DNA of 64,000 nt from Octopus sinensis (GCF_006345805.1 NC_043000.1:119102001-119166000); one strand, 5' to 3'; numbered from the stretch's first letter, positions 4,685 through 25,809 are shown. Program-made: numbers and translations. Notes: generated by a model from the letters alone, not told the origin.

Positions 4685-4917
4685 TGCTCTCTTTCTTTCT
4701 TTATTTCTTTCTTTCTTTCTTTCTTTATTTCTTTCTTTCTTTCTTTCTTCTTTTATTTTTTCTTTCTGTCTTCCTTTCTTTTTTCTTCCTTTCTTTTTTC
4801 TTCCTTTCTTTTTTCTTTGTTTCTTTCTTCCTTTCGATCATTCTTCCTTTCCTTTTTCTTTCTTTCGTTCTTTCTTTCTTTCTTTCGTTCTTTCTTTCTT
4901 TCTTTCTTTCTTTCTTT
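4685..4917. repeat. (CTTT)n polypyrimidine tract just upstream of the chitin deacetylase 1 promoter
   Basis: Direct reading. Confidence 0.9.
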
Positions 4918-4961
4918 ACAATAAGGCTTGTCCCACTGCATAGACGATGTGAGAGAATGAT

Positions 4962-5043
4962 GGGCGGAATTTTTTAAAAAGTTATACGTAACCTCCCCAT
5001 TAATAGTCATTGTGGTTCGTTCTATGTTACAAAGTGTATAAAA
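4962..5043 (+). promoter_or_regulatory. Putative core promoter: GC box (GGGCGG 4962-4967) and TATA box (TATAAAA 5037-5043)
   Basis: Both motifs lie upstream of ATG 5163 in a segment conserved in the paralog (GC box 54060-54065, TTTAAAA about 53975-53981). Confidence 0.5.
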
Positions 5044-5162
5044 GCAATAAAGAAATCAAGCAATTTCAGTCGCAGCCTAAACTTCAGACTTTATGCATAA
5101 CACTTTAATCAATATATATATATATATATATATACATTTATATTGACAAAGAGTTCATCGAA

Positions 5163-5928
5163 ATGGGCTTTCAAGGTTTTTACCTGAAACGCCAACACAC
5201 ATTTTGGCTGCCATTAATTTTGCTCCATGTCTTATTTATTATTCCATCATATTCTCAGGAAAGCTGTACAAAAGACGGTGAATATAAGTGCCATGAAACA
5301 GACGATTCCAAATTCTATCATTGTACAGGACCTAAACACGGCATATTGAAAAATTGTGGTAAAGGACTAGAATTCAATCCACAGTATAACGTCTGTGACT
5401 GGGAAGTCGATGGCGATGGCTATTGCAAATCAGATAGAGATCAGTCAAAAACCACCCATGATGTTGGAGCTACTACCAAATCACCTACAAAGTCTGTAGT
5501 TACCACTCACAGTGTTCCTTTCAAGCGAAGTTCAACACTCAGTAAAATTTTGTCAACCACTACTTCTAAACCATCAACTCATTCTCAAACTACTTCTAAA
5601 CCATCAACTCAATCTCAAACTACTTCTAAACCATCAACTCATCCTCAAACTACTTCTAAACCATCAACTCATTCTCAAACTACTTCTAAACCATCAAATT
5701 CTCTGAATAGCTGTAGAAAAAGCAATGAATATAAGTGCCATGAAACAAACAATTACCAATTCTATCTTTGTACGGGATTTGAAACAGGCGCATTAAAAAC
5801 TTGTCCTGAAGGATCTCATTTCAATCCAGTAGCTAGCATCTGTACCTGTTCAAATATTCCAAACGCTGTCAAGTGCCACAACCAGGATGATCAGTCAAAA
5901 ACCACTACTTCTAAACCCCAACTCACTG
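5163..5928 (+). CDS. Chitin deacetylase paralog 1, exon 1: signal peptide, CBM14 #1 (5265-5426), Ser/Thr mucin-like linker, CBM14 #2 (5712-5876)
   Basis: Hydrophobic N-terminus ending PSYS/QES and two 6-Cys peritrophin-A type domains. The phase-1 donor G|GTAAGT at 5928/5929 joins in frame to the acceptor at 7810/7811. Confidence 0.9.
5559..5697 (+). repeat. Coding 30-bp tandem repeat (about 4.6 copies; TTSKPSTHSQ)
   Basis: Unit ACTACTTCTAAACCATCAACTCATTCTCAA. Confidence 0.95.
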
Positions 5929-7810
5929 GTAAGTAATATATTTTCAAGAATTTTATGTACCAAATCTCTTCTTTCAGTGATATTTTTATCTCTTGCCACA
6001 GTAGTAACTCAATAAGAAATAAGTGGTCTCTGATTGTCGAACTAGAGTTATATATAATCCAGTTTACAACACTCTGAATTTGGTATTTATTCAAAACTGC
6101 TGTTCTTTCTCTTATCTTTTAAGCTTAAAATATTTCCTATTCTAAGCAGTCATTTATCGATTTTATGTTGCTTCTTACGAACGACCATTTCTTAAAATAT
6201 TAAACGGCGTAAAACATGAGTTTATATCCGAAATTGTAATTCACCACCTGTTAACGATCTTGTGTACAAGTTTGATAGATTATTTTAGATAAGAGGTATT
6301 GTATATAGTATAGGATATAGTCATTTTAACTACTATATTTCATACTGAAAAGGTGACTTTGGACTCAATTCTCGGACTGTGTTGCGGGTTGGGTTTTTGA
6401 ATAGGGTATTTTATCTCCTGTTGCTCCAGTAAACTCTGATAATCAGGATCAACATAGTTTTGAGTCATAAAATAATGAGAGTAATTGGCGATAAAATGAG
6501 TAATACTGTCACAACTGGAAGTGACGAGGGCGGAAACCCAAAATGAAAGTATATTCTGTAATATTCTGCATAGATAACAAAAAAAAAACGCCACTGAAGC
6601 AATGACATAGAAGAGATTTAAACTAGAAAATAAATTAAACTTGAAAACAATGTTTGCAAGAAATTTTTCTTTATAAGCAAAACATGTCATATGAAATCAG
6701 ATTCGTGAATGACAGTTCATGGTTTCCGAATATACTTCTCCAAAAACACCCCTGCAGATACGATGAATATAAAGCACAGCCCATTCTGCATTGTCGCCTT
6801 GGCTGTTTTTGTTTATTGGCGAGCACCCATCTCACTTCGATTGTTTAAACATTCAAATAACGGGATAAAATGGAGATTTAAGTTTTGTATTCCACAAACA
6901 TCAGCTCAAGTGGTCTGTGTAATATACATTGTCTGATATGAATGCGTCAGATAGGTTAAGTTTAGTTAAGAGCCATTCAACTAAAATGAGGTATTGTTAA
7001 CATTGGTGGAAATCTCCCCATATTATTACAAAAGAACTGAAGGCGGAGAGCTAGCATATTCGTTAGCGTGTTGGGCTAAATGCTTAGCGGCCTTTCTTGC
7101 GTCTTTATGCTCTGAGTTCAAATTCTGCCAAGGTCTGCTTTGCCTTTCATCCTATCCGGTTTGATAAAATATATACCATTATATTACTGTGTAATATACA
7201 TTGACTGATATAAATGCGTCAGATAGCTTAAGTTTAGTTAATAACCATTCAGCTAAAATGAAGTATAGTTAACGTTGATGGAAATCTCTCTACGATATTA
7301 GAAAAGAACTGCGTTCACTGATATTCCTCGATAAGCAAGCCATGGAGTCGCTTTAACAGCGGCGTTCACCGGGTGTATTTCTATGCATAACATACACGTT
7401 CAGATCTATGTATTTTCACGAAGAATTTCAGTGATCTTTGAAATTATTAATTTATAGTGTTATATAATTATTTATTTTTCTCCGATAGCAATAATCGTAT
7501 AAATGGTTATGTTTACAAGATAACTGCATCATTCTGCTCTCTGTTGATGAACAACCTTCCAAAATCCCCACGACAAATGAAATTTTTGTGCCGTGTTCTC
7601 TGATTCCACAGATTTTCCCTATTGTTTGTATAATTGCATTTTTACACCCGTATCAATGGTTGGAACTCCTGTTTCGTTTTTTATTATTGTAGACCAATAG
7701 CTCTAGGCCTCATTCCATATAAGAGTTAGTTAGCAGATGTGTGTTCGTATCCATTAAAAAAAAAAAACTTTCATCTTTTGGTTTGATTTTATGGTTTTTT
7801 TACTTTGCAG
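5929..7810 (+). other. Phase-1 GT-AG intron of chitin deacetylase paralog 1
   Basis: GTAAGT...TTTTTACTTTGCAG. The spliced CDS is 1710 nt (569 aa plus stop), and the intron position is identical in the paralog. Confidence 0.9.
6916..7311 (+). repeat. 124-bp direct repeats (6916-7039, 7188-7311) flanking a SINE fragment
   Basis: TGTGTAATATACATTG...AAAAGAACTG occurs on both sides. The same structure is in the paralog intron (about 50365-50755). Confidence 0.85.
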
Positions 7811-8754
7811 GTCCCTGTCAACCAGAACGTTGCAAGCTACCGAAATGTAAATGTCCTGGGCCGGAAATTCCAGGCTCCCTTCCAACAAATGCAACTCCGC
7901 AGATAATTCTATTGACTTTTGACGACGGAATTTACTGGCAAACTTTCGATTATTACAGAAATTTGTTTAGCATGAACCTAACCAATCCAAACGGCTGTCC
8001 TGTTGGAGCAACGTTTTACGTGTCCGACAGCAAATATTCTGATCCTGCTCTCGTGAAAGAATTATATGACCTAAAGCATGAAATAGCTACTCACACCCAA
8101 ACGCATAGACTCCCATCTACATACTGGAATAATGCTAATTCCAGTGATTATTATCGAGAAATTGTTGGCATGAAAAACTGGCTTAGTGAAAAGGCCAGTA
8201 TTCCAAAAGAAAAAATTGTAGGATATCGTTCACCGTATCTTGAACAAGGGGGCGACACCCAGTTCGGAACTTTGAAACTTAATGAATTTCTCTACGATAC
8301 TTCGATGGTAACAGGTTCATTTTCTAATACTACATTGAAACCAATATGGCCCTTTACACTTGATTACCCGGTTATCAAAAAATATTGCCAACTTAGAGTC
8401 TGCCCAAAGAACTCATATCCAGGATTTTGGGAATTCCCTCTTAATCGTTGGTACAATGAAGCAGGAGATTCTTTTTCAATGACTGATGAAAATAGAGTTC
8501 CTCAAAACTCAAAGGATGTTATAAGTTACTTGAAATACAACTTTAATCGCCATTACAAAAGAAATAAGGCACCTTTCGGCATATTTTTGCATATGCCATG
8601 GCTTATGAAGAATTTAGCTGCATTGCAGACATTTTTGAAAGAAGTTGCCCTCAATAACGATGTATGGATTGTGACTGTGTCTCAAGCTTTGCAATGGATT
8701 CAGAATCCAGTACCATTGGACAAAATTTCTAAATTCAAGAATTGGAAATGTTAA
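7811..8754 (+). CDS. Chitin deacetylase paralog 1, exon 2: CE4 (polysaccharide deacetylase) catalytic domain, arthropod CDA-like
   Basis: Motifs TFDDG, HEIATHTQTH, GYRSPYL, YDTSM and PFGIFLH are present, with a Cys-rich N-terminal CQPERCKLPKCKC. Stop is TAA 8752-8754. Confidence 0.92.
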
Positions 8755-9318
8755 TTAAATAACTGAGAAGGAGAAACAAACAAGATGATGGGTATTTTTC
8801 GATTGAAAATTTAAACTATTTAAAATGTCACTTATTGTTCTCGGAATTTTGCCATTCTTTGGGTGTTTTTTAATAGTTTGCTCTTCATCAATCTTTTACA
8901 TATTTTCTTATTTCCCTTTATGAAGTTTTATCGCTTAACTGAATAAATTACGTAGAAATACGTAGAAATGTATTACTACCACTCTTAAGAAATCAATTGA
9001 AAATTTTTAAAGCTTTGCTAAGTAATCTTATTAAAATATGCCATTATAAAATTATGAATTGCTTAATTTTTATTACAAACTCGTATGAAATTTGAAAATA
9101 TTTTATATCTTATATATATTAGATGAAATACGAATTAAGACTGAATTTCTAGTAGATTTATACAGTTCATTATGTAAATATACTTCGCTTCAATAAAACG
9201 AGGTTTATAAATGACTACAATTGCCTTCAAACTTTGCTTTTCTGACCTGAACATCAATGTTTTGAAACTGACCAATTTTCCATTACATTTCTACTTGGTA
9301 GACGGAAAATGAAAGGTT

Positions 9319-9324
<6 letters not shown>

Positions 9325-9371
<47 letters not shown>

Positions 9372-9373
9372 GT
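9325..9373. repeat. (TG)n microsatellite
   Basis: Direct reading. Confidence 0.9.
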
Positions 9374-10779
9374 AGTGGCTATAGGATTGATCTCTGGTAA
9401 AAATATTAGGGTACATATTGTCTGTGTTTGTCCCCATCACTGCTTGACAACTGGTTTTGATGTGCTCATGTGCTTCGCGGCTCAGCAAAGAGACCGATAG
9501 AATAATCACCAAGCTTTAAAAAGACAAGTGCTGGGGTTGATTTCGTTCGTCTAAAATTCTTGAAAGTGATGCCTCAGCTTGGCTGCAGTCTAATGATTGA
9601 AACAAGTAAAAGAAAAGATATTCTTGAATAGAAGTAAGAGAAATTGAAAGTTTAGTAATCTACGAAATGAAATATAAAACAATGGAATCTGAGAGAACAA
9701 AACTTGTATGTAAACTGATTGAAATAATGAGGTTAATTTTATGCTGTGAGAGCAAGAAATAGATCGAATAAAAATAGTTACTTTGAAAACTTAGCAAAAT
9801 ACTGTAAGACATTTGGTAAAGTGCAGTATAGGTTATTCAATGTAGGGTATTTAGTGTATAATGTTGCCGCAACAACTACGAATAATTAATATAACGATTT
9901 CAAATTTTGGTACAAGTCCATCAAGCTCGGGGAAGGAGATAAGTCTATTACAATGACGGCAGTGTTCAACTGATACTTATGTTATCGACCCCGGAAGTCG
10001 ACCTCAACGGAATTTGAACTCAGAATGTAAAGACGGATGAAATGTCGCTAAGCATTCTGTTGGGCGTGCCAACGATTCTGCCAGCTCGCCGCTTTACGAA
10101 TAGTTATATAACAAGAAAATTTCTTTGACGCAGTCTACGTATAAATGTGAGGTGAATTCTAGATATATCTTAAATGGTGTGTTGATATGTTACACTCTCT
10201 CCATCTTACGACTGCTCTTCACGAACACAAAATAGTACCAGACGCTAAACATAAATATACTGAGTTCATAAAACCAGTACGGGTTGTTTAATTTTACACT
10301 GTATCATGAGAGTAAGAAGTACCATTCGAAGCTTTGGCATGTGGCACGAGAAGGAAAGAAACGACTATCCACCGGCCGGCTCGATCGAGCTCGTGTGTGT
10401 GTTATGCTCCAAATTATTTGTTTCGACGTCAGAGCGAACGAGTGGAACGTGATGCGGGTAAGCGTTACTAAGATACCAGAAGCTGACGATGACCGTTGCA
10501 GCACATCTGCGCGAGCAGATATTGAAGCCACTGGATTTTCAAGTGATCTCTTCTTCTCTTCTACGTTTTTGAGTTATTCTTTTAACCCTGTTATGCCTGG
10601 TAAAAGGACTCTCTGAGCCGTTTTTTTATTATTATTTTCATAACTTTCGAAAGAAGATTTTTCTCTGAAACTGGGTTACTTAGCCTGAAATTTATCCTGC
10701 TAAAAGCTCATATCACTGATTTCGAAAAAAGTTTTCTTCGTTGCCCTAGAAACGGTAGGAGTTGAACAGGTGGTATATC

Positions 10780-10994
10780 TCTCTTTTCTCTCTTTTACTT
10801 GTTTCAGTCATTTGACTGCGGCCATGGTGGAGCACCGCCTTTAGAGCAAATCGACCCTGAGACTTATTCCTTGTAAGCCCAGTACTTACTCTATCGGTCT
10901 CTTTTTGCCGAACCGCTAAGTTACGGGGACGTAAACACACCAGCATCGGTTGTCAAGCAATGCTAGGGGGACAAACACAGACACACAAACATAT

Positions 10995-11066
<72 letters not shown>

Positions 11067-11462
11067 CTTTACTACCCAAAAGGGGCTAAACACAGAGGGG
11101 ACAAACAAGGACAAACAAAGGGATTAAGTCGATTACATCGACCCCAGTGCGTAACTGGTACTTAATTATCGACCCCGAAAGGATGAAAGGCAAAGTCGAC
11201 CTCGGCGGAATTTGAACTCGGAACGTAACGACAGACGAAATACGGCTACGCAGGTCGCCCGGCGTGCTAACGTTTCTGCCAGCTCGCCGCCTTATATATA
11301 TATTTATATATATATACGACAGGCTTCTTTCAGTTTCCGTCAACCAAATCCACTCAAAAGTCAATTTTCGGCCCGAGGCTATAGTAGATGACACTTTCCC
11401 AAGATGCCACGCAGTGGGACTAAACCCGGAACCATGTGGCTGGTAAGCAAGCTACTTACCAC
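10780..11462 (-). mobile_element. Microsatellite-containing tRNA-derived SINE with a Meta-core SINE nested in its TA tract (about 11065-11290)
   Basis: Head ..GTGGTAAGTAGCTTGCTTACC..GGTTCCGGGTTTAGTCCC and tail ...CAGTCAAATGACTGAAACAAGTAAAAGAG. Confidence 0.85.
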
Positions 11463-12626
11463 TTAATTTTTCTGTCTGGTTAAATAAAATTTGATTATAC
11501 AATAGAAACAATAGCAAAATTGCTGTTACAAAAAAAATATTTGTTTGCTACTGATGTATATTCTCGCCAAATTTCATATCATAGTATGAGTAGTTCCTGG
11601 AAACTTTCAACAAATAGAAAGGCAAAATGTTTCTTGTTTTAAATTGGGTAAATTTGATGACGTCATTTTTTAAATTATTAAAATTTTTTTTTCCTGTGCT
11701 GTACCCTTATCCCTGTAAAGTTTCATGGTCATTGTCTTACTGGTTTTGGAAGACATTTTGAACACTATAGGAGACCTAAATTTTAGCTCATCTGAGAACA
11801 ACTGATGATGTCATCAGAAGAATGGCCGACGTCAACAAGATTTTTATAATGCTGAAATATTTACCTATCAATTGTCTATACATATGTCAACTTTCATTGT
11901 CATAAATTTAGTAGTTCAGGAATAAAGGAGGCGAGTGCCCTGAGATCCACGTCCAACAGGCTTATGGAGCCCCTAAAACACCAGGGTTTTATAGGGCTAG
12001 AATGTATCTTGCAAGCCGAGCTGTTTCATACATTTTTCTCAAGGCATTTCTGGTCAAAGGACTTTTGGCCCCAGCACACTCTCCTTATTTGATGGACCAG
12101 CTGCAGAATAGCTGAGATTTGTAAAAGTAAATTTATTGCCTCACACCACATTTCCATTTCACTCTCCATCAGACCAGCAGGTCACTTCCGATCGTTTCTA
12201 AAAGAACACTCACTATAAAGATTCCTTTTCATAAACGCTTTCGAGATCGTTTCTTCAAATGATTTGACACTGAATGATTTTTGGAAAACGCATTTTAATG
12301 TTCCTGATGCAGTGTTAAGGATTGTAGCAACATAAATGCAGCCTTGGCCTGTTGGAAACATATAGTTACAAATCTGCACAAAAGGCGGCAGGGTTCTTGT
12401 CTTAACAATTACTAACATGTTTTCATGGACAGGAACTGTTTTCCGTAGAGAATATTCTGTCTGAGCAGCTCTTTCAAGGAGAACATTTCTCACCTAGATA
12501 CACTGGAAAAGTGCTAAAAAAGTGCAATAAAAATTGTCTGTCGTTCCTCTGCTGGTTAGTTTACTGCGGCGAACGGTGGTTTAATTTAGCAGGAATGAAC
12601 AAAGAACTGATACAAACAACGATAAC

Positions 12627-12716
12627 ATGTATGGAAGGAATAAGGTTTCTCTTAACCTGGCCTATTGGAATGTGAGAAGCCTTTTAGATCAAGCAGATAG
12701 CCCTGAAAGGAGCACA
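12627..12716 (+). mobile_element. RTE/BovB-like LINE endonuclease N-terminal fragment
   Basis: MYGRNKVSLNLAYWNVRSLLDQADSPERST resembles the WNVRTL...RPERRT start of RTE ORFs. Confidence 0.4.
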
Positions 12717-12809
12717 TAAATGTGAAACAAAATGGAAGATATAGTACTCGAATGCCAGAGGTAGAGGACTATGCTTTACTGAAAAGCAGCAGATATATCA
12801 CAAAACTTA

Positions 12810-13218
12810 TTCTCTTTTACTCTTTTACTTGTTTCAGTCATTTGACTGCGGCCATGCTGGAGCACTGCCTTTAAACGAGCAACTCGACCCCGGGACTTAT
12901 TCTTTGTAAGCCCAGTACTTATTCTATCGGTCTCTTTTGCCGAACCGCTAAGTGACAGGGACATAAACACACCAGCATCAGTTGTCAAGCAATGCTAGGG
13001 GGACAAACACAGACACCCAAACATACAGGCACACACACACATATATGTATTTACATATATACGACGGGCTTCTTTCAGTTTCCGTCTACCAAATCCGCTC
13101 GCAAGGCAATGGTCGGCCCAAGGCTACAGTAGAAGACACTTGCCCAATGTGACACGCAGTGGGACTAAACCCGGAACCATGTGGCTGGTAAGCAAGCTAC
13201 TTACCACACAGCCACTCC
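12810..13218 (-). mobile_element. tRNA-derived SINE (same family as 10780)
   Basis: Full head, core, internal microsatellite and tail. Other copies at 16086-16482(-), 34114-34524(+), 45978-46384(-), 62150-62270(+, partial) and 62804-63190(-). Confidence 0.9.
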
Positions 13219-13279
13219 TGCGTATATATACATACATACATATACATATATACATGTTATATAAACATACATATATTTG

Positions 13280-13311
<32 letters not shown>

Positions 13312-13560
13312 GTTGTGTCTGAGGAGTGTAATTTCTTTTAAGTGCTTTATTATTTAACACACTCGCAGGTAAAGCTCCCATTCATTTAGTCATTTCCTAA
13401 AATTTTCTCTGCATCATGTAACCTTTTCAATAGTCGTTGACTCTGTCCTTTATCTGAGCTACGTTCTTTTTGTTTGTTTGTGCGCAAATGTGTGGGTCAG
13501 TGTGTGTGTGCATACCTAATCCAAAGACGAAATTTCACACAATATGATATATATATATAA

Positions 13561-15207
<1,647 letters not shown>

Positions 15208-15262
15208 TTCGTTTCAGCACACGATCTCAGATCAAATTACTTGCTATGCGAGTACATCTCCG

Positions 15263-15330
<68 letters not shown>

Positions 15331-15333
<3 letters not shown>

Positions 15334-15602
15334 GGTCTCACCAAGGAAATGACTAGAGACCGAGACCTATGGAAGTATGCTGTGCGTGAGAAGACCCGGC
15401 GGGACAAGTGAGACCATAACCCATGGCCTCTACCTGGGATGTAGCCAGTCGACATATGCATACCTTTCCTTCTTGGGACACAAATCTACACTTGTGAAGA
15501 CCTGTTGAGGCAAGTGGAAATCAGAACCAAACTCGAAGTCGATCAACATCAATGGAAATTGCTAGCATGGAAAGCGGACGCTAAATGATGATGATGATGA
15601 TA
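15331..15602 (+). mobile_element. RTE LINE 3' end
   Basis: Encodes GLTKEMTRDRDLWKYAVREKTR*, has a (GAT)n tail and is homologous to 44380-44560. Confidence 0.8.
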
Positions 15603-15816
15603 TATACAAACACACACATAAATCAGTATTTTTCAACTGGGGACCATATGACCTGCTAGTAGTTAGGTTCTATTGACCATCTCAACTTCCAAGTGGGATT
15701 TGTCAAACCAGTGGCTTATAGAAGCTACTTGACGTCGCTGAATTCAAGGCTGTCGAAACCCATATCACGACTACTATTAGTGTAGTTGCTATTGCCAGTT
15801 CCAGTACATTTGCTAG

Positions 15817-15870
<54 letters not shown>

Positions 15871-15900
15871 ATACTACTACTACCACAACCACCACCACCA
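15817..15900. repeat. (TAC)n trinucleotide tract
   Basis: Direct reading. Confidence 0.9.
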
Positions 15901-16040
15901 GCTTCAGTACAGTTAGTTACTTTCACCATACATATATACATATATACATACATTCATACATACACACACATGTATATATGTATATACATATATATATATA
16001 CATATACTCATACATGTATATATATACATACACACACACA

Positions 16041-16085
<45 letters not shown>

Positions 16086-16087
<2 letters not shown>

Positions 16088-16700
16088 TCTTTTATTCTTT
16101 TACATGTTTCAGTCATTTGACTACGGCCATGCTGGAGCACCGACTTTAATCGAGCAACTCGACCCCGGGACTTATTCTTTGTAAGCCCAGTACTTATTCT
16201 ATCGGTCTCTTTTGCCGAACCGCTAAGTAACGGGGACATAAACACACCAGCATCGGTTGTCAAGCAATGCTAGGAGGACAAACACAGACACAAACACACA
16301 CACACACGCATATATATATATACATATATACGACGGGCTTCTTTCAGTTTCCGTCTACCAAATCCACTCACAAGGCATTGGTCGGCCCGGGGCTATAGTA
16401 GAAGACACTTGCCCAAGGTGCCACGCAGTGGGACTGAACCCGGAACCATGTGGTTGGTAAACAAGCTACCTACCACACAGCCAAAAGGCGGCGAGCTGGC
16501 AGAAACGTTAGCACGCTGGGCGAAATGCGTAGCTGTATTTCGTCTGCCGTTACGTTCTGAGTTCAAATTCCGCCGAGGTCGACTTTGCCTTTCATCCTTT
16601 CGGGGTCGATAAATTAAGTACCAGTTACGCACTGGGGTCGACGTAATCCGTTTGTCTGTCCTTATTTGTCCCCTCTGTGTGTAGCCCCTTGTGGGTAGTA
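16086..16700. mobile_element. Two head-to-head SINEs: 16086-16482 (-) and Meta-core SINE 16483-16700 (+)
   Basis: Both match the other window copies of their families. Confidence 0.85.
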
Positions 16701-16703
16701 AAG

Positions 16704-16798
<95 letters not shown>

Positions 16799-16849
16799 TA
16801 TAAACATACTTAAAAGCACAAAATAAGAAATAATGAAACGAAAAATTGT

Positions 16850-17070
16850 ATTTTCCGAATGTACATATAATGCCATTTTATTTCATTATGTTTTAAAATT
16901 AAATCAGCTAAATGCTTCCCATCATTGTCAACACACTGTTGGAGACGTTCATGAAAGTTATCGATAATTCTAGGGATCATTTCTTCTGGAATTGTGAAAT
17001 GCGATTTCTTCTTGTGGGGATATTTAAAATCAAAAGTATTCAGTCATCGCCCTCAATCTATTGATGAATG
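16850..17070. mobile_element. IS630/Tc1/mariner transposase C-terminal fragments in opposite orientations (DFFLWG type, resembling DD41D/rosa)
   Basis: Plus 17003-17070 reads DFFLWGYLKSKVFSHRPQSIDE. Minus about 16998-16890 reads IPEEMIPRIIDNFHERLQQCVDNDGKHL. Confidence 0.6.
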
Positions 17071-17141
17071 AAAATGTGCAATATATATACACACATACAT
17101 ACATACATATATATATACACGCATACATACATATATATATA

Positions 17142-17480
17142 GGAATAGCCAGAATGTTATTCTTTAAAATATCTAAAGGTACGGGTGGCACAGTGTATAC
17201 AAGATGCTCCTAGATCAAAACGGTTGTTCAATAAGTTTATATTATCCCTATATTTCAAAATTTCATATATCTCCATAGAATAAAGTTCACATCCATCTCT
17301 ACTATTCTTATAAGGCTGCGCCTGTCTTATTATATCCCATTTAAGGCTAAATCCGATATTTTTTCTTTCAACTCCCAAATTTTTCTAGACAGCGTTATGC
17401 AACCTGCCTTATGTTTAAGTCTAAAGCTAGACAGATGGTTGTTTATACTTTTCTTCAGGTCTATAGAACATCGAAAATAA
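17142..17480 (-). mobile_element. Penelope-like element, GIY-YIG C-terminal segment (inverted relative to the adjacent RT)
   Basis: NNHLSSFRLKHK..TLSRKIW...LKWDIIRQAQPYKN...CEL..ME.YEIL...LLNNR. Confidence 0.7.
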
Positions 17481-17659
17481 AATAGCTATTATTTGAAGTC
17501 ATTTCTGTACATTTATAAATTACGTTTTGGACCAGACACCGACCAGATACCAGAACTGAACTTGAAATATAAAATAACTACAAGGAAGAACTTGCGGGAT
17601 ATAAATTTAGAAATAAAAAAAGGTTATGATGAAATACGATTTAGTTGACAGGACAGAGC

Positions 17660-19105
17660 CATTAACACCGTGTGAACCTCAAATTAATCTGAGACCACAA
17701 GAAAAATTTCTGTGAGAACCCTTCTGTAAGACTTATATGCCCAACTAAGTCGGATATTGGCCGGCTTACTAAGTCTATTTTGGACAATATTCTGCCCCAT
17801 ATAATCCCTAGCCTTCCTTTGAAATTATGGATTAACACAGACATGGTAATCCATTGGTTTAAATCTTTAAATAATAATAGCGGATATTCCTTCATCCAAT
17901 TCGACATTAATAATTACTATTCTAGTATATCTCATATTCTCCTAAATAAATCACTCATTTCCGCTAAAAAACCTCTTTCTCATAACTAGGGAAGAAATTG
18001 ATATTATTTTACTAGCTAGGAAAACTATCATAGAATTTGAAGGAAAATTGTGGACCAGGGCTGATACCCCAATTAATTTTGATATATCCATGGGCTCCAG
18101 TGACTCGGCGGAGGTCACTAATTTAGTAGGAACTTATTAAAATTTTTAAGTAGAGAGATCCCTGAATTGCAAGGAGGTTTATATAGGGATGATGCATTAT
18201 TCATCGTCCCTAGCAATAATAAATCGATCATTGAGAGAATAAGAAAGAAAATTAGTAGATTTTTCAAAGATTTCAACTTAAGTATTACTTATGAATATAA
18301 CACTAAGATAGTTAACTTTCTAGATGTTACTTTGGATTTAAACTCGAAATTATATTACCCATGTAGAAAAGATGGTGAAATTACTAGATATGTAAATAAA
18401 TTATCAAATCACCCCCCTCCCCAAATATACTGAAATCGATAGTTAAAAGTATTTCGAGAAGAATTACTAAATTATCTTCTAACAATGAAATTTGTAATTC
18501 TCACTCATATCATTACAATGTTGCCTCATCTAGAGCAGGATATAACCAGGAAATTGCCTTCCTAGATCTTGATAATACAAGCCTTTCGAATAAGAAAATG
18601 AATAAAAATGGCTCAAATAATATAGGATCTTCAACTTTAAAAAAATATGAATCAACCAAAACAGATAACCTATCATATAAACCTGATACAAATAATAGAA
18701 ATGGTAGACAAGACACAAATAAGTATAAAAAGATTAAGTTAAGTTAAATAAATACAAATGAAAATATGAAAATCTCTCCCACTGATAAAAAACCTATTAA
18801 ATATATGTATAAGACTGAAGATAATAACAAAACTCTGAGGGATATGGATATCACCAATCTTTCCTACCCTTACTCAAATAAAAAATTTCATAAGTACAAA
18901 TATTGTATGGTTGAATATACCTTTCAACTGGGTAATTTCTACGAACATATATGACAAATTTATGTCCATACTAGAAACAAACTTCCCTGCTTCCCATAAA
19001 TATTATAAAATATTTTCTCGTAAATCAGTTAGAATATCATACTCTACTCTTCCAAATATAAGAACTATAATAGCTAGATTAAATAGGAAAAATATTAATT
19101 ATTAA
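17660..19105 (+). mobile_element. Penelope-like retroelement RT relic (frameshifted)
   Basis: FIQFDINNYYSSIS, MGSSDSAEVTNLVG, GGLYRDDAL, VNFLDVTLDL, RYVNKLSNHPP, WLNIPFN..RISYSTLPNI. Confidence 0.85.
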
Positions 19106-20026
19106 AAGATTTAGTAATATAAATAAATTGAATGAAGTAGAATAAAATATTTTAAAATTTCTATAACTATTACATAAATTCCATATATCTAGTGAAATTA
19201 TTAAGTTTTAATTGAAATGGTACTTTCCATATCTATTTCTGCAAGAATTCTACTACACCTAATTTCCCCCTTTTTTTATAAATATTACCCCTAACTGGCC
19301 TAATTTATTATACCCCATATAAACCATATTTCATTCTTGAATACTAAATTAATAATCCCTAATTCTAAAGACTTCCATCTTGGTTAATTCCCTTCCATTG
19401 TATTTTAAAATATTTTAAAGGCTCTTGATATATGTGCTAATTAATATTTTTTTTGCTAGAAATTTTCTCATAAAAATTTCTTCTAAATCCCCTTAATTAA
19501 TATTCAAAACCTGACAATTGAATAGATAATAATATCTTTTATTTAGTCTCTATTTTTATAATGGTCTTACAAAGTATAATGCTCACAGCAGCTAAATTTT
19601 GATATTAACATGGTCCGATTTGAATTTTTTCTTCCACGAAAGAAAGAGCAAACCTTCTTCTATCATACTCCCAATTGTGGTCAACTTGCGCCGCACGGTT
19701 TCAGAGGAGAGCGTGTTAGTTGAAGGCTACCAAGCCTACCACAAACACACACGCAGACAACTCCAGGTCAATAAATATAAGGTTCATTCTGGATTAGCCT
19801 CGTGTTTATATGGTTGGCTACATCACCTCTCAGATGCTGAGAGCGTGATAAAACGATAGTTGGTATGGTGAGAGGGGTTGTTTTTAGGAATGAAACTTAC
19901 TGTAGCATATTTCCGAAGAAGGTGATATGGTGATATATTCCGGGACATAAAGATGGTGATGTATATGTAACTACACACGTGCTGTTGGCGATTTCTTTCT
20001 ACTTCTTTGAGCTTTTCCGTTTCTAC

Positions 20027-20059
20027 TTTCCGACGAAGAACTATGTTCCAAACGTCAAA
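20027..20059 (+). ncRNA. Degenerate minimal hammerhead-like motif (U4C core, G12 mutated)
   Basis: TTT CCGACGA A GAAC-TAT-GTTC CAAAC GTC AAA. Confidence 0.3.
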
Positions 20060-20271
20060 AACTCATTTCTCCTACTGAGCGACCATGCTGGAGCACCGCC
20101 TTGAAGGGATTTAGTCCACAAAATCACCGCCAGGACGTATTTCTTAAGCCCAATACTTATTCTTATGGAATCCTTTGCCGAACCGCTTAGTTGCGAGAAC
20201 GTAGACACACCAACACCGGTTGGTTTTCAACGGTGATGGAAGACAAACACAGTCAGAAAGACCACACAAAC

Positions 20272-20318
<47 letters not shown>

Positions 20319-20399
20319 ATCGGGATCGGGAAAATAGTACCCGAATACCGGAGGTAGAGTAATATGCTTTATTAAAAAAGCAGCAAAAATATCACAAAA

Positions 20400-20439
20400 A
20401 CTGTGATTCAGAGTTTCACGTACCCGTTCTTCGGACAGT
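20400..20439 (-). ncRNA. Family A hammerhead-like motif (U4C)
   Basis: ACTGT CCGAAGA ACG-GGTA-CGT GAAA CTCTGAA TC ACAGT. Confidence 0.45.
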
Positions 20440-23400
20440 TTTGTTTAGAATGGAACAAAATAAGGATATTTGCATACATATACAATTACTGTTGAAAATG
20501 GTTTTTGTTTCGTTGGTCCTTTGAACTAACGGTCTTTTCAATAAACGCTTGCATGAAATTACAATTGCGGTCAAAAATCATATTATTATAATATTCGAAG
20601 AAAACCTTAAATCAAAGAAGATTATGTAGAAGGAAGGAGCCCTGAATACCCAGGGTAAGTAATTCGTGGCAAAAAATAATAAATTAAAATAAATTATATC
20701 AATTAAAAGATATAAACGTTTAAAAAACTTTTACAAAGAACTAACATCCTGAAATACATATACATTTAGCAATACATACACATACCAAACAACCTATATA
20801 GACATACATTATATACACTAAACATACAGGCGTTGGTACCTGACTGCATACATATACAGACAAATATAGGCAAAACATAAATATATACAAATGCATAAAC
20901 ACACACGCACATAATACCTTAGTAGACAGAGGCGAGAGAACGAAAACGAAAAGAAACTCAGAGAATAACAAGTGGTGAGAGAAAGAAAAAGGAAAAGAAG
21001 AAAAGAAATAAAAGAAAAAGAAACAAAATTAGAAAGAGAAAATAGATAGACAGTCTTTGTGCATCTCCTGGCGAAGAGTTATTGTGGAAACTGGGTTTAC
21101 GAGGTGGTCTTTAAGCTCTGCAATAATTTTGGGAGCTGTACTTTTGTGATCCTTCCTAACAATTCGCGTAAGAATCCGCCGGTCCCTATCTGAAAGTTTT
21201 GGTTTTCTTTCGGAGTTTTGTTTCAACGAGGAGGTTTTTCCCTCTTTCTCAAAGGCTGTGATTACTTTCGAGACAGTACACCAAACATTTCGGCTGTTTT
21301 CGTTACGCCAGCGCCTGCCATACGAGCACCAACAATTTGATCTCTTTGAAAGACCGATATATCGGTCATTTTAATGAATTTTAATTATCTTTTTCTGATG
21401 ATATCTGAAAAAACCCCAGCAATTTTAGCAAAACATTAAGCAACACTAATAATAAATATATAAATAAACATAAAGATAAACAAGCTTTTGACGGTTTTAT
21501 AGATATTTCAAAATTATGATGCTAGGTGTTTCCATTATTTTGACCAACCCCTGTGTATGCATTTGTATATATTTATGTTTTACCCATTTGTGTCTGAATA
21601 TGTATGTAGCCATATGCCAATGCCTGTATATTTCTTGGCTCTCCGTCGGTTATGACGACGAGGGCTCCAGTTGATCCGATTAACGGAACAGCCTGGTAGT
21701 GAAATTAACGTGCATGTGGCTGAGCACTCCACAGAAACGTGTACCCTTAACGTAGTTCTCGGGGAGATTCAACGTGACACAATGTGTGACAAGGCTGGCC
21801 CTTTGAAATACAGGTACAACAGAAACAGGAAGAAAGAGTGAATGGTATTGTGAAAGAGTACAGTAGGGTTCGCCACCACCCGCTGCCGGAGCCTCGTGGT
21901 GCTTCAGGTTTTTTCACTCAATAAATACTCACAACGCCCGGTCTGGGAATCGAAGCCGTAAATTTGCCACCCTAATCACTGGGCCATTGCGCCTCCACGA
22001 TGAATGTAAATAACAGAAAGAGATTGCTGTTTTCTGATGTGCATTGTTTGAGGATAATAGAATGGACATTGTCCACTCGAAGCGACCAGATTTAACTAGT
22101 GTATGTTGTGAGATACTTCATACACGCGAAGCAAAGAAGGTGATTTCCTCTGCGGGTATACTGCTTCATGAACCATCGTCATTGTAAAGTTGCATGAAGA
22201 AAGTTTCTATAAAGTTTGTAGAAATAATTTTAGTAAGTGACCAACTTTAAGTCTAAGACTCACGAGGGCTTTCAACCGGTGCGAGGTACGGACCTACCCG
22301 TTGCAGTTCCAAAGATGGTCTTACAGGTGTTGCAGTACCGGGTCCAGCGTGTAGTGCTAGCGATTTTTCTCCAGGTGTGGGGTTCTGTGTTCTTTACATG
22401 AATTGTTGCAGGGCATCTATTATCGAACTACTTGTAGGATTGAGGTCATGTTTGCATGTGGATTGCTTTCAATTTCATGCCTAGCTATTTCTCATAACTC
22501 ACAAGTAAAGTATAACTGGTATGAAAACCGATGGAGCTATAATCAGTTAGCTGACATGAAATGTTATTGGTTGCAGAAGGTGGGTGGTGTAGATCTAAGT
22601 CATAGCTGAGCATGCGCGGACTAGTTACGCTAAAGCAATCGTTGGATGACCCTCCAAGTGCATAGATGTGAAGTGAGATAAACACTTTCGAAGCAGGAAG
22701 AAATACAGTCGAAAATTGGTAGCTTAAGTTCACAGAGTGCTTGAGGTAACACATACCTTGTAGGAGGGCGAAGAAAGAAAGTCTGAGTCAGTTAAGTGGA
22801 AGTCCTTGTTGCCGATGTCCAAGGGAATGTGTGAGTGTAAATGAATGAAATCAGTATAGTTACAGGCAACTTTAGGCAGCTAGCTGGCAGAATTGTTAGC
22901 ATGCCGGGCAAAATGCTCAGCGACATTTCGTCTGTCTTTATGATCTGAGTTCAAATTCCGCCGAGGTTGACTGCCTGTTATCCTTTCGGAGTCGCTAAAT
23001 TGAGTACCAGTTGAGCAGTGGGATCGATGTAATCGACTTACCCCTTCCACCGGAGTTTGCTGGCTTGTGCCAAAATTTGAAATCACTATAGTTTCGGGCA
23101 ACACTTTCTGGAGTGAGCTTTGAGTAAAGAGTCTAATCTGGACCTCGAAACTAATCTATTGATAAAGACGAAAATATTCGCGCCTTGAGAAGATCAGAAT
23201 GTATGATATGCTAGCCTGTTAAGAAGTGATGTACAACGTTGAGGTTGGATCGGAATACAGGGATGTTAGAGAAGCGGAGGAGGTAATTGTCTAGAGTATT
23301 TAGCGTTAGTGTTTGACATCTTGGGAAGTATAAACGGGAAGTTATGACAATCTCCAGTCACGAACCTGTTCCATACGCTTGCAACAGCGAACTACACTAA

Positions 23401-23832
23401 AGTCTACTAAATAGAAGAGACCACGTCTAACACCCTAAATAATTTGGAATTTTAATCGCAGAAGAAAGAAATATATATATACTGTGATCGTTATTTTTAG
23501 TCGAATGTAATGCACTGAAATTACTCTACAAATATTCTTGGTAAAGCCTGAAAGGCCCGCAGTTCCACCGATCTGTATTCGTGGCCTTGAGGTGGGAAAA
23601 ATTTGCTGCGTAAGTGAGGCGACATAGAATCGGTAGGGAATGGAAACGGTATGGAGAAAATTAAGATTTTAGTTTGGAAAGTAATTGCAGCGTGGAAGGT
23701 GTTTATAAGCCATTTAAGAAACACACAAAAATCGTTAGATTCACTTCAACATTTAAATTTATTTTGCCAAAATATTTTCATCGCTTTGAGACCGCGTCCT
23801 GATCACTGACAAAATTCCATGCTGCACGGAAT

Positions 23833-23883
23833 TTTGTCAGTGATCAGGTCGCGATCTCAAAGCGACGAAAATATTTTGGCAAA
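23833..23883 (+). ncRNA. Family C hammerhead-like motif (G3-C8 swap), stems intact; damaged mirror copy at 23763-23813 (-)
   Basis: TTTGTCA GTGATCA G GTCGC-GATCTCAAA-GCGAC GAAA ATATT T TGGCAAA. Confidence 0.6.
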
Positions 23884-24031
23884 ATAAATTTAAATGTTGA
23901 AGTGAATCTTACTATTTTTGTGTTTCCTAAATGACTTATAAGCACCTTCCACGCTACAATTGTTTTCATTCTAGCACACGATCTTAGATCAGGTCACTTG
24001 CTATGCAAATACATCTCCGTGATTTGGAAAT

Positions 24032-25395: not shown

Positions 25396-25427
<32 letters not shown>

Positions 25428-25625: not shown

Positions 25626-25657
<32 letters not shown>

Positions 25658-25809
25658 TTTTTACTATTATCATTTCTTAAATATAGCACGAAACACGTGT
25701 CGTTATTCTACCAAATATATACGTTTTATTTATTATTTTGCACATTACTTAATCATCATTATATGTTTTATATTATATTTAATCTTTCTATAATAAGTCA
25801 TTTTTCTAA

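What the first reader, a model, noticed from the sequence alone, without database searches (positions are those of the whole stretch)
4940..9000. Inverted pair of secreted CBM14-chitin deacetylase genes
4940-9000 and about 48725-54080 are an inverted duplication covering promoter, two exons, the same phase-1 intron and 3' flank. Both copies keep all five CE4 motifs. The architecture (signal peptide, CBM14 x1-2, mucin-like linker, CE4, no LDLa) resembles arthropod cuticle or peritrophic-matrix CDAs, here in what appears to be a mollusc. This points to a chitin-to-chitosan remodelling module that could act in beak, radula, sucker or gut lining (inference).
Basis: partly seen in the sequence, partly recalled or inferred. 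Interest (0 to 1): 0.7.

Follow-up and report, generated by a model that had tools for sequence, protein, structure and literature searches.

The report
Octopus chitin deacetylase gene pair
Two real, tail-to-tail paralogous octopus genes encode secreted chitin-binding chitin deacetylases; they belong to a larger octopus-specific gene cluster, one is already in RefSeq, and the other is a faster-evolving, apparently unannotated copy, so this is a sound but fairly ordinary gene-family finding.

Summary
The window is Octopus sinensis chromosome CM016862.1.

**Copy A (+ strand).** CDS 5163-5928 and 7811-8754, 569 aa.

**Copy B (- strand).** CDS 53876-53420 and 49868-48916, 469 aa.

Both are complete two-exon transcription units. 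They share the proposed GT-AG phase-1 intron, a TATA-like box and a poly(A) signal. Their stop codons are 40.2 kb apart, and the spacer holds only transposon debris.

Both encode signal peptide, CBM14, a Ser/Thr-rich linker and a CE4 domain. A has a second CBM14. All catalytic and zinc-binding residues are kept. Motifs 4 and 5 are the insect-type variants, not the canonical ones.

They are not haplotypes. They share 57-68% amino-acid identity, and the same arrangement exists in O. vulgaris.

- B is exactly RefSeq XP_029635468.1 ("chitin deacetylase 7-like"). A's protein is in no database searched.
- The pair belongs to a cluster of at least five copies that forms an octopus-specific clade, not orthologous to any sampled insect CDA group.
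- A 0.9-kb intron tract is 97% identical against 72-80% elsewhere. This is an old gene conversion that predates the O. sinensis/O. vulgaris split.
- A is the derived copy, with 2.5 times more substitutions, stem dN/dS about 1.1 and a lost conserved cysteine pair.

Tissue, expression and enzyme activity remain untested.

The parts
4904..5162 (+). Copy A 5' flank/promoter shared with copy B (about 73-75% identity). It holds a TATA-like box TATAAAAG at 5037-5044, about 125 nt upstream of the ATG. It is bounded upstream by a (TCTT)n microsatellite at 4690-4917.
5163..5928 (+). Copy A exon 1 (CDS). Signal peptide is about aa 1-32. CBM14-1 is aa 35-88. The Ser/Thr-rich linker includes 4.6 copies of a 30-nt repeat at 5559-5697. 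CBM14-2 is aa 184-238, followed by a short linker. The exon ends with the first base of a Gly codon.
5929..7810 (+). Copy A intron, 1882 nt, GTAAGT...TTTGCAG, phase 1.
6586..7491 (+). High-identity tract inside the intron. It is 96-99% identical to 52774-52508 plus 50828-50179 in B. A-versus-B fixed divergence is 2.6% here, against 20-28% in the neighbouring sequence. I read it as a gene-conversion tract older than the O. sinensis/O. vulgaris split.
7811..8754 (+). Copy A exon 2, the whole CE4/NodB catalytic domain plus C-terminal loops (aa 256-569). Stop codon TAA at 8752-8754. Key residues are D293, D294, H350, H354, R395, D481 and H516.
8755..8998 (+). Copy A 3' flank shared with B (76-87% identity). 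AATAAA at 8942.
8999..48725 (.). Spacer of about 40 kb between the two 3' ends. No cellular gene was found. It holds reverse-transcriptase and Tc1/mariner transposase fragments, microsatellites, and a solo copy (20275-24030) of the 3.8-kb segment that lies upstream of copy A.
48726..48915 (-). Copy B 3' flank shared with A. AATAAA at 48777.
48916..49868 (-). Copy B exon 2, the CE4 catalytic domain. Stop codon TGA at 48918-48916.
49869..53419 (-). Copy B intron, 3551 nt, phase 1. It contains a B-only 1679-nt insertion at 50829-52507, which is also present in O. vulgaris B.
53420..53876 (-). Copy B exon 1 (CDS). The ATG is at 53876 as in RefSeq isoform X1; the ATG aligned with A's start is at 53870. 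It encodes the signal peptide, a single CBM14 and a short linker with one repeat unit.
53877..54097 (-). Copy B 5' flank/promoter shared with A. TTTAAAAG at 53981-53974.

Best explanation
These are two genuine paralogous genes of Octopus sinensis. They lie tail to tail, 40 kb apart, inside a larger octopus-specific cluster of chitin deacetylase genes.

**Shown.** Each gene is a complete two-exon unit. Exon 1 encodes the export signal, the chitin-binding CBM14 module(s) and a Ser/Thr-rich linker. Exon 2 encodes the whole CE4 (NodB-type) catalytic domain.

**Inferred mechanism.**
- The protein is secreted.
- The linker is probably O-glycosylated.
- CBM14 tethers the protein to chitin.
- The CE4 domain uses a Zn2+ held by Asp294, His350 and His354 (A numbering).
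- Asp293 acts as base and His516 as acid, hydrolysing N-acetyl groups of chitin to give chitosan-like polymer plus acetate, as in Bombyx CDA8.

**The two copies.**
- Copy B is the conservative copy and is already annotated as XP_029635468.1.
- Copy A is the derived copy. It gained a second CBM14 and extra linker repeats, and lost a conserved cysteine pair flanking motif 4. It took about three times as many amino-acid replacements as B after the duplication, but is still kept open and now looks constrained. The most likely reading is sub- or neofunctionalisation.

The copies have exchanged sequence by gene conversion in the intron and at the start of exon 2.

**Not established.** Whether, when and where the genes are transcribed, which chitin they act on (the animal's own or foreign), and enzyme activity.
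For: **Anatomy and identity**
- Inverted homology and exact junctions.
- B is identical to RefSeq XP_029635468.1.
- CBM_14 and Polysacc_deac_1 score above Pfam gathering thresholds.
- Closest solved structures are Bombyx CDA8 and CDA1, with E 1.9e-61 for A and 1.6e-72 for B.
- The AlphaFold model of A has CE4 pLDDT above 90. Foldseek to 5z34 gives TM 0.81 and rmsd 1.8 A. The CBM14 modules match tachycitin and Der p 23. The linker is disordered and there is an N-terminal helix.
- Both N-termini have basic residues followed by a 12-aa hydrophobic core, KD 2.6-2.9.

**Active site**
- All catalytic and metal residues sit on invariant or nearly invariant family columns.
- Motif definitions come from PMC6415152 and PMC6463723.

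**Not haplotypes**
- The copies share 57-68% amino-acid identity.
- B(+)/A(-) tail to tail with about 38 kb between them also exists in the independent O. vulgaris assembly. Orthologous loci are 98.6-99.4% identical.

**Selection keeps the ORFs open**
- 178 random substitutions in A exon 2 give a mean of 7.8 stops, with P(no stop) = 0.0002.
- Between species, exon 2 dN/dS is 0.35 for A and 0.63 for B.

**A is the derived copy**
- With C copies as outgroup, A has 100 lineage-specific substitutions against 40 for B (p = 4e-7). The A stem has 81N/19S and the B stem 27N/13S.
- A lacks the cysteine pair present in 29 of 36 relatives.

**Gene conversion**
- In the tract, 23 of 901 sites are fixed A|B differences and none group by species.

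**Clade**
- The octopus copies are monophyletic with 99% bootstrap.
Against: - No transcript evidence was available for either copy.
- Copy A's protein is absent from a 15-billion-protein collection, and no O. sinensis A-like model turned up. RefSeq therefore apparently does not call it protein-coding.
- Paralog dN/dS in exon 2 is about 1.0, and about 1.1 on the A stem. This also fits a period of relaxed constraint.
- The difference in N:S ratio between the A and B stems is not significant on its own (81:19 against 27:13).
- Motifs 4 and 5 are non-canonical. From my own recollection of the insect CDA literature, some insect CDAs with the same variants show little activity alone.
- The A-like paralog A' in O. 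vulgaris has an in-frame stop in exon 1, so members of this subfamily do decay.
- The NJ tree samples only insect groups I and V and has weak deep support.
Confidence: 0.75

Rival explanations
1. Copy A is an unexpressed gene on its way to becoming a pseudogene, and only copy B is a working gene.
For: - The A-stem dN/dS is about 1.1, and A has 2.5 times more substitutions than B.
- A's protein is in no database and no O. sinensis model resembles it.
- A lost a conserved cysteine pair.
- Its sister copy A' in O. vulgaris carries a stop codon.
- A exon 1 differs between species by 15 nonsynonymous and 1 synonymous change.
Against: - The ORF, splice sites, TATA-like box and AATAAA are intact in both O. 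sinensis and O. vulgaris.
- Under neutral drift about 7.8 stops are expected, with P(no stop) = 0.0002.
- Every catalytic residue is retained.
- Between-species exon 2 dN/dS is 0.35.
- The O. vulgaris annotation does call it a gene, P0001.
Confidence: 0.15
2. One or both proteins are chitin-binding, matrix-organising proteins with little or no deacetylase activity (pseudoenzyme-like). They would shape chitin by binding rather than by catalysis.
For: - Motif 4 lacks the canonical DxxD(W/Y) aromatic wall, and motif 5 lacks the canonical Leu.
- The insect CDA review says that measuring activity has been a major difficulty (PMC7953033).
- A carries two CBM14 modules.
Against: - The catalytic base, acid, Zn triad, motif-3 Arg and motif-4 Asp are all conserved in both copies across three octopus species.
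- BmCDA8, which has the same motif variants, is the closest structure.
Confidence: 0.2
3. The enzymes act on foreign chitin (crustacean prey cuticle in saliva or gut, or fungal/parasite chitin in immunity) rather than on the octopus's own beak, radula, sucker or gut cuticle.
For: - Tandem expansion, lineage specificity and fast amino-acid evolution are typical of digestive, venom and immune genes (inference).
- A chitin deacetylase transcript is among the 20 most abundant in cuttlefish haemocytes (PMC7551771).
Against: - No paper links a CDA to octopus salivary glands.
- The cuttlefish transcript was not shown to be related to this cluster.
- There are no expression data for these genes.
Confidence: 0.2
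4. The two copies are haplotypes or an assembly duplication wrongly placed in inverted orientation.
For: None was found.
Against: - Amino-acid identity is 57-68% and nucleotide divergence is 20-28% over most of the unit.
- The copies differ in domain content and in one intron insertion.
- The same arrangement is found in an independent assembly of another species.
- O. bimaculoides has a B-type ortholog that groups with B, not A.
Confidence: 0.01

Closest known systems
Bombyx mori chitin deacetylases BmCDA8 (PDB 5Z34, group V) and BmCDA1 (5ZNS/5ZNT, group I)
   Same: - The CE4 (beta/alpha)7 barrel plus C-terminal loops, at 33-39% identity. The model of A superposes on 5Z34 with TM 0.81 and rmsd 1.8 A.
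- The same motif set: TFDD, H(S/T)xxH, RxP(Y/F)L, the xMxDx variant of motif 4 and the aromatic-x-H variant of motif 5.

   Different: - BmCDA8 has no chitin-binding domain. BmCDA1 has CBM14 plus LDLa.
- The octopus proteins have CBM14 (one or two) plus a mucin-like linker and no LDLa.
- They fall in a separate molluscan branch of the tree.
- Copy A lacks the Cys pair flanking motif 4 that both Bombyx enzymes keep.
Insect group IV (CDA5) and group III (CDA4) chitin deacetylases
   Same: The domain plan is the same: a signal peptide, one peritrophin-A/CBM14 domain, a catalytic domain and no LDLa. [quoted passage not shown]
   Different: - No sequence of these groups was available here, so orthology is untested.
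- The octopus copies form a lineage-specific clade with gastropod CBM14-CE4 proteins as nearest relatives.
- Copy A has two CBM14 modules.
Gastropod CBM14-CE4 proteins (Haliotis P0009, Pomacea P0011, Bradybaena P0012) and the shell-matrix chitin deacetylase of Lottia
   Same: These are the nearest non-octopus relatives, at 49-50% identity to B in the CE4 domain. P0009 and P0012 carry the same CBM_14 + PF01522 Pfam combination; P0011 lists PF01522 only. A chitin deacetylase is a minor secreted component of the Lottia shell matrix (PMC3374290).
   Different: - Octopuses have no mineralised shell.
- The octopus genes have multiplied into a local cluster.
- The grouping with gastropods has weak bootstrap support.
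RefSeq 'chitin deacetylase 7-like' of Octopus sinensis (XP_029635468.1, XP_036358301.1, XP_036358302.1)
   Same: XP_029635468.1 is copy B exactly.
   Different: - The name implies insect group V (catalytic domain only), which fits neither the architecture nor the tree.
- Copy A has no counterpart among the O. sinensis models found.

Membership tests
CE4 / NodB-homology chitin deacetylase (animal type) | NodB homology domain recognised by the family profile | tested here: met
   PF01522 scores 30.4 bits (A) and 33.7 bits (B) against a cut-off of 23.1. phmmer to BmCDA8/BmCDA1 gives E 1e-61 to 1e-72.
CE4 / NodB-homology chitin deacetylase (animal type) | Motif 1 TFDD (catalytic base Asp plus metal Asp) | tested here: met
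   TFDD is present in A, B and all octopus copies. The definition is from PMC6415152.
CE4 / NodB-homology chitin deacetylase (animal type) | Motif 2 H(S/T)xxH (two zinc-binding His) | tested here: met
   A has HTQTH and B has HSKSH.
CE4 / NodB-homology chitin deacetylase (animal type) | Motif 3 RxPY | tested here: met
   A has RSPYL. B has RSPFL, with Phe as in BmCDA8 RIPFL. The Arg is invariant in 36 of 36 sequences.
CE4 / NodB-homology chitin deacetylase (animal type) | Motif 4 in its canonical form DxxD(W/Y) | tested here: not met
   A has SMTDE and B has SMADS. Only the buried Asp is kept, and the aromatic residue is absent. BmCDA1 (AMVDS) and BmCDA8 (SMVDG) deviate in the same way. This separates the animal subfamily from microbial CE4 enzymes. 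It does not exclude A and B from the animal subfamily.
CE4 / NodB-homology chitin deacetylase (animal type) | Motif 5 LxH (catalytic acid His) | tested here: met
   The His is present as FLH in both copies. The canonical Leu position is Phe, as in BmCDA8 (FVH).
CE4 / NodB-homology chitin deacetylase (animal type) | (beta/alpha)7 barrel fold with C-terminal loops | tested here: met
   In the predicted model of A, CE4 pLDDT is mostly above 90. Foldseek finds 5z34 at E 1.8e-32, TM 0.81 and rmsd 1.8 A. This is a prediction, not a solved structure.
CE4 / NodB-homology chitin deacetylase (animal type) | Measured de-N-acetylation of chitin or chito-oligomers | not testable with these tools
   This needs recombinant protein and an acetate-release or mass-spectrometry assay.
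CBM14 / peritrophin-A chitin-binding domain | Profile match and six-cysteine pattern | tested here: met
   PF01607 scores 30.0 bits (A, two stretches) and 33.0 bits (B) against a cut-off of 22.1. The Cys spacing is C-7-C-10-C-10-C-12-C-7/9-C. A's second module has a seventh Cys. The fold matches tachycitin 1dqc and Der p 23 4zce. The second module is modelled with lower confidence, pLDDT 57-68.
CBM14 / peritrophin-A chitin-binding domain | Binding to chitin | not testable with these tools
   This needs a pull-down on chitin beads or colloidal chitin.
Insect CDA group III/IV (CDA4/CDA5) | Architecture: one CBD plus catalytic domain, no LDLa, with a long S/T/P/Q linker in group IV | tested here: met
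   B fits. A fits except that it has two CBDs. There is no LDLa hit in Pfam.
Insect CDA group III/IV (CDA4/CDA5) | Phylogenetic placement within the insect group | not tested
   No group III/IV sequence was in hand. The octopus clade is separate from the ecdysozoan sequences sampled, which were groups I and V plus a tardigrade.
Insect CDA group V (CDA6-9, the group implied by the RefSeq name 'CDA7-like') | Catalytic domain only, no chitin-binding domain | tested here: not met
   Both copies carry CBM14. They do not group with BmCDA8 or the lepidopteran group V-like proteins. The group definition is from PMC7953033.

The most novel reading that the evidence does not exclude
Copy A is an octopus-specific, neofunctionalised chitin deacetylase. 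After duplication it went through a burst of adaptive amino-acid change. Stem dN/dS is about 1.1 overall, and about 3 in the segment that contains the cleft-forming loop and motif 4. It lost a conserved disulfide next to motif 4 and gained a second CBM14 and a variable-length mucin repeat. Together these would give it a different substrate or site of action from B, for example prey cuticle, sucker-cuticle turnover or defence. Gene conversion between the inverted copies would keep the shared intron and 5' end of the CE4 exon homogeneous.
Probability: 0.2. Interest if true: 0.5.

Novelty: new member of a known kind. Interest (0 to 1): 0.27.

Why it matters
Chitin deacetylases tune the stiffness, hydration and protein binding of chitin. 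They are well studied in insects and fungi but almost unstudied in cephalopods. Cephalopods build beaks, radulae, sucker linings, stylets and gut cuticle from chitin.

This locus gives a defined set of candidate genes: one conservative, one fast-evolving and apparently unannotated, both in an octopus-specific cluster. They could be tested for roles in those materials, or in feeding and immunity. The locus is also a clean small example of duplication, gene conversion and asymmetric divergence.

It does not reveal a new kind of enzyme or mechanism.

Tried and rejected
- **Haplotype or assembly artefact.** Rejected on divergence and on conserved synteny in O. vulgaris.
- **High-identity intron tract as an independent transposon insertion in both copies.** Rejected because homology continues in register on both flanks. 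The 23 A|B fixed differences are shared by both species.
- **Recent within-species gene conversion.** Rejected because no sites group by species.
- **An 11-nt target-site duplication at the B-only insertion.** Inspection shows only about 4-5 nt (TGTTT) repeated, so this stays inconclusive.
- **More CDA copies inside the window.** None were found.
- **Other cellular genes in the spacer.** Only RVT_1, DDE_3, HTH_Tnp_Tc3 and Exo_endo_phos fragments were found. There are no tRNAs.
- **The 'MDIVHSKRP...' leader exon of the O. vulgaris models as a true first exon.** Considered unlikely. It replaces the signal peptide and lies in a repeated 3.8-kb segment.
- **RefSeq isoform X3.** Its 60-nt gap has GT..CA ends, so it is not a canonical intron.
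- **Literature on octopus or cephalopod CDAs, squid pen, salivary gland.** Nothing specific turned up. The only lead was a CDA among the top haemocyte transcripts in cuttlefish.
- **The look-up of encoding contigs for P0003.** It failed because only the longest product is on record.
- **Searches not run.** I did not run the large representative search or a second homology search, because the family assignment was already unambiguous.


Full report

Yes. A repeat scan and a self-BLAST show three colinear inverted blocks:
- 4950-5593 matches 54077-53440 at 72%.
- 5920-6852 matches 53428-52508 at 75%.
- 6842-8998 matches 50828-48726 at 85%.

ORF listing and translation show CBM14-like and CE4-like reading frames in both places.
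- In A the sequence reads ...CTCACTG|GTAAGT...TTTGCAG|GTCCCTGT.
- B has the same context.
- Both are GT-AG in phase 1.
- The joined ORFs are 569 aa (A) and 467/469 aa (B).

A tblastn of both proteins finds no other CDA exon in the window.

**2. Where does it come from, and what is already known?**

- The 469-aa product of B is identical to P0005, which is XP_029635468.1, 'chitin deacetylase 7-like isoform X1 [Octopus sinensis]'.
- Locus L002 from chromosome CM016862.1 (GCA_006345805.1) matches window 64000-38916 at 100%. The window is therefore O. sinensis.
- Copy A's exact protein is not among about 15 billion sequences.
- The homology search returned no O. sinensis A-like model. The best hit is the O. 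vulgaris ortholog P0001, at 91% overall and 96% in exon 2.
- I infer that A is not annotated as protein-coding in O. sinensis, although its ORF is intact.

**3. Anatomy**

Each copy is a complete unit.
- A shared 5' flank of about 220-260 nt holds a TATA-like box: A has TATAAAAG at 5037-5044, and B has TTTAAAAG at 53981-53974.
- Exon 1 encodes the N-terminal modules.
- One phase-1 intron follows, of 1882 nt in A and 3551 nt in B.
- Exon 2 encodes the entire catalytic domain.
- An AATAAA lies about 190 nt (A, 8942) or 140 nt (B, 48777) after the stop.
- Homology ends just beyond that signal.

The stops are 40,161 nt apart. The spacer contains only reverse-transcriptase and Tc1/mariner fragments, microsatellites and other repeats. 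There are no tRNAs.

Protein features:
- Pfam finds CBM_14 (two stretches in A, one in B) and Polysacc_deac_1 above the gathering score. It reports nothing else, so there is no LDLa.
- The N-termini have two basic residues followed by a hydrophobic core, LPLILLHVLFII in A and LLLILGHVLFIT in B. A small-residue SYS motif follows, which fits a cleaved signal peptide. This is a heuristic, not a predictor.
- The linker is 49% Ser+Thr in A. It contains 4.6 copies of a 30-nt repeat (TTSKPSTHSQ). B has one copy and O. vulgaris A has three more than A.

**4. Is the enzyme likely to be competent?**

The closest solved structures are Bombyx mori CDA8 (5Z34) and CDA1 (5ZNS). E-values are 1.9e-61 and 2.4e-61 for A, and 1.6e-72 and 5.4e-70 for B. 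I used the published motif definitions (PMC6415152; PMC6463723) and a 36-sequence CE4 alignment.

| Motif | Copy A | Copy B |
|---|---|---|
| 1 | TFDD | TFDD |
| 2 | HTQTH | HSKSH |
| 3 | RSPYL | RSPFL |
| 4 | SMTDE | SMADS |
| 5 | FLH | FLH |

- Motif 4 is the insect-type variant seen in BmCDA1 (AMVDS) and BmCDA8 (SMVDG), not the canonical DxxD(W/Y).
- Motif 5 keeps the catalytic His, with Phe in place of the canonical Leu as in BmCDA8.
- The base Asp, metal Asp, both His, the Arg, the motif-4 Asp and the acid His all sit on invariant or nearly invariant columns.

An AlphaFold model of A built on a 28-sequence alignment gives these confidences:
- pLDDT mostly above 90 for the CE4 domain.
- 70-90 for CBM14-1.
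- 57-68 for CBM14-2.
- Below 35 for the linker.

Foldseek returns 5Z34 (TM 0.81, rmsd 1.8 A) and 5ZNS first, then bacterial and fungal CE4 enzymes. It also matches tachycitin and Der p 23 for the CBM14 part.

One difference stands out. The two cysteines that flank motif 4 are present in 29 of 36 relatives, including both Bombyx enzymes and B. Both are replaced in the A lineage (A, O. vulgaris A and A').

**5. Not haplotypes, and not only a pair**

A and B share 57-68% amino-acid identity. Outside one tract, nucleotide divergence is 20-28%.

In the independent O. vulgaris assembly (OX597817.1):
- The B ortholog is on + at 48189812-48194773.
- The A ortholog is on - at 48232792-48236477.
- They are tail to tail, about 38 kb apart.
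- The loci are 99.4% (B) and 98.6% (A) identical to the window.

Both species carry more copies:
- Two tandem C-type copies lie upstream of B (L002 118-1077 and 10001-15251; L003).
- O. vulgaris has an A-like copy A' beyond A (L004).
- A more distant CE4 gene sits at the edge of L003.

These all lie outside the window. The second C copy in O. sinensis has frameshifts in exon 2. That could mean a pseudogene or assembly indels. A' in O. vulgaris has an in-frame stop in exon 1.

**6. Phylogeny**

I built an NJ tree from 313 columns with Kimura distances and 200 bootstraps.
- All octopus cluster copies group in one clade at 99%.
- A+A' has 100% support and B (three species) has 100%.
- A+B against C has 75%.
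- The nearest outgroups are gastropod CBM14-CE4 proteins, with weak support.
- BmCDA1, BmCDA8, lepidopteran proteins and a tardigrade protein form a separate branch.

Three conclusions follow. The cluster is a lineage-specific expansion. The A/B split predates the O. bimaculoides/O. sinensis divergence. The RefSeq label 'CDA7-like' is a best-hit name, not orthology. Group V insect CDAs lack a chitin-binding domain, whereas the octopus architecture is that of groups III/IV (PMC7953033).

**7. Mosaic divergence and gene conversion**

A-versus-B fixed divergence varies sharply along the unit:

| Segment | A coordinates | Divergence |
|---|---|---|
| Promoter | 4904-5162 | 24.6% |
| Exon 1 (shared part) | 5163-5593 | 23.3% |
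| 5' intron | 5929-6585 | 20.6% |
| Intron tract | 6586-7491 | 2.6% |
| 3' intron | 7492-7810 | 8.4% |
| First 138 nt of exon 2 | 7811-7948 | 10.1% |
| Mid exon 2 | 7949-8248 | 27.6% |
| End of exon 2 | 8249-8754 | 14.2% |
| 3' flank | 8755-8998 | 20.8% |

In a four-way alignment of A and B from both species, the tract has 23 of 901 sites of type AA|BB and none of type Os|Ov. The homogenisation is therefore much younger than the duplication but older than the species split. The simplest explanation is non-allelic gene conversion between the inverted copies. This is an inference. The 1.68-kb insertion in B's intron is shared with O. vulgaris B.

**8. Selection**

Nei-Gojobori estimates:
- A versus B exon 2 has dS 0.21, dN 0.22 and omega 1.03. 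Exon 1 has omega 0.64.
- Between species, A exon 2 has omega 0.35 (8 S, 11 N) and A exon 1 has 1 S and 15 N.
- B exon 2 has omega 0.63 (2 S, 5 N) and B exon 1 is identical.

An omega near 1 might suggest decay. However, 178 random substitutions in A's exon 2 produce a mean of 7.8 stop codons. Only 0.02% of simulations stay open. There are also no frameshifts in either species. Coding capacity has therefore been maintained.

I polarised the changes with the C copies as outgroup:
- A has 100 lineage-specific substitutions (81 N, 19 S, omega about 1.1).
- B has 40 (27 N, 13 S, omega about 0.5).
- The Tajima relative-rate test gives p = 4e-7 at the nucleotide level.
- At the amino-acid level the counts are 36 against 11, p = 3e-4.

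A is therefore the derived copy. The pattern fits a burst of replacement after duplication followed by constraint. I cannot separate positive selection from a relaxed phase with these tools. Converted tracts, small counts and the simple method all limit the inference.

**9. Function**

The family assignment and mechanism follow from homology (section 4). They rest on established knowledge of CE4 enzymes (PMC6415152, PMC6463723). In brief, this is a secreted, chitin-tethered, zinc-dependent de-N-acetylase that converts chitin towards chitosan.

The substrate and tissue are unknown. I found no paper on octopus or cephalopod CDAs. The only leads are:
- A chitin deacetylase among the top 20 transcripts of cuttlefish haemocytes (PMC7551771).
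- A minor CDA in the Lottia shell matrix (PMC3374290).

The other literature searches gave nothing. Action on prey or pathogen chitin is an equally open alternative.

**10. Verdict**

The finding is real and correctly interpreted at the level of gene identity and architecture. It is a new member of a known kind. One copy is already in RefSeq, and the other is an apparently unannotated, faster-evolving paralog. Interest is modest (0.27). The added value lies in four points:
- the cluster context;
- the old gene-conversion tract;
- the asymmetric divergence, with loss of a conserved cysteine pair in A;
- the correction of the 'CDA7-like' label.

Noticed in passing
window 813-4577 and 20275-24030: A 3.8-kb segment ends about 590 nt upstream of copy A's ATG. 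It is repeated in direct orientation at 95.9% inside the A-B spacer, with no CDA exon beside it. The same segment lies upstream of both A and A' in O. vulgaris (L001 8194-11789, L004 7195-11950), so it belongs to the A-type duplication unit. The solo copy may be the relic of a lost A-type gene. It contains a palindrome of about 290 nt at 4225-4514.
   Followed up: partly
window 2618-2695 and 22062-22139: Both sites encode 'MDIVHSKRPDLTSVCCEILHTREAKK' at 100%. The O. vulgaris gene models P0001 and P0004 use this as a leader exon in place of the signal-peptide start. Because it sits in the repeated 3.8-kb segment and removes the export signal, it is probably an annotation artefact.
   Followed up: partly
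L002 1-15251 (O. sinensis, upstream of B and outside the window); L003 (O. vulgaris): Two further tandem C-type CDA copies lie upstream of B. In O. sinensis the second one has frameshifts and stops in its CE4 exon (L002 14335-15251). RefSeq isoform X2 (XP_036358301.1) joins its first exon to B, giving a 34-kb gene model. The O. vulgaris model P0002 (780 aa) fuses two tandem copies.
   Followed up: partly
window 53537-53478: RefSeq isoform X3 (XP_036358302.1) lacks these 60 nt (VVTTHGVPFKRSSLLSKILP). The gap has GT..CA ends, so it is not a canonical intron. It may reflect repeat-region misalignment or cross-mapping from a paralog.
   Followed up: partly
L004 about 13070-13100 (O. vulgaris A'): The A-like paralog A' has an in-frame stop in exon 1 (VKCHN*DD). 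The annotated model P0004 skips exon 1. It is likely a pseudogene or a truncated, CE4-only gene.
   Followed up: no
window 5559-5697: The 30-nt coding tandem repeat (TTSKPSTHSQ) varies in copy number. There are 4.6 copies in O. sinensis A, three more in O. vulgaris A and one in B. This is a length-variable mucin-like linker.
   Followed up: partly
window 50829-52507: A 1679-nt insertion is present only in B's intron, in both species. It is flanked by a short TGTTT repeat and contains a copy of a dispersed SINE-like repeat. That repeat is also seen at 3456-3591, 7048-7178, 9961-10087, 54466-54648 and 55160-55684.
   Followed up: partly
window 41512-43766, 46800-47831, 56676-59808: These are transposon remnants: RVT_1 at 43275-43766 and 56676-58340, Exo_endo_phos at 59323-59808, and a Tc1/mariner-type transposase (DDE_3 at 46800-47291, HTH_Tnp_Tc3_2 at 47358-47831).
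   Followed up: partly
window 45380-45530 and 45778-45928: A 151-nt inverted repeat, 99% complementary, has its arms 247 nt apart. It could be a MITE or a hairpin-forming element.
   Followed up: no
window 6915-7039 and 7187-7311: An internal 272-nt-period duplication (about 88-90% identity) lies inside the high-identity intron tract and is present in both A and B.
   Followed up: no
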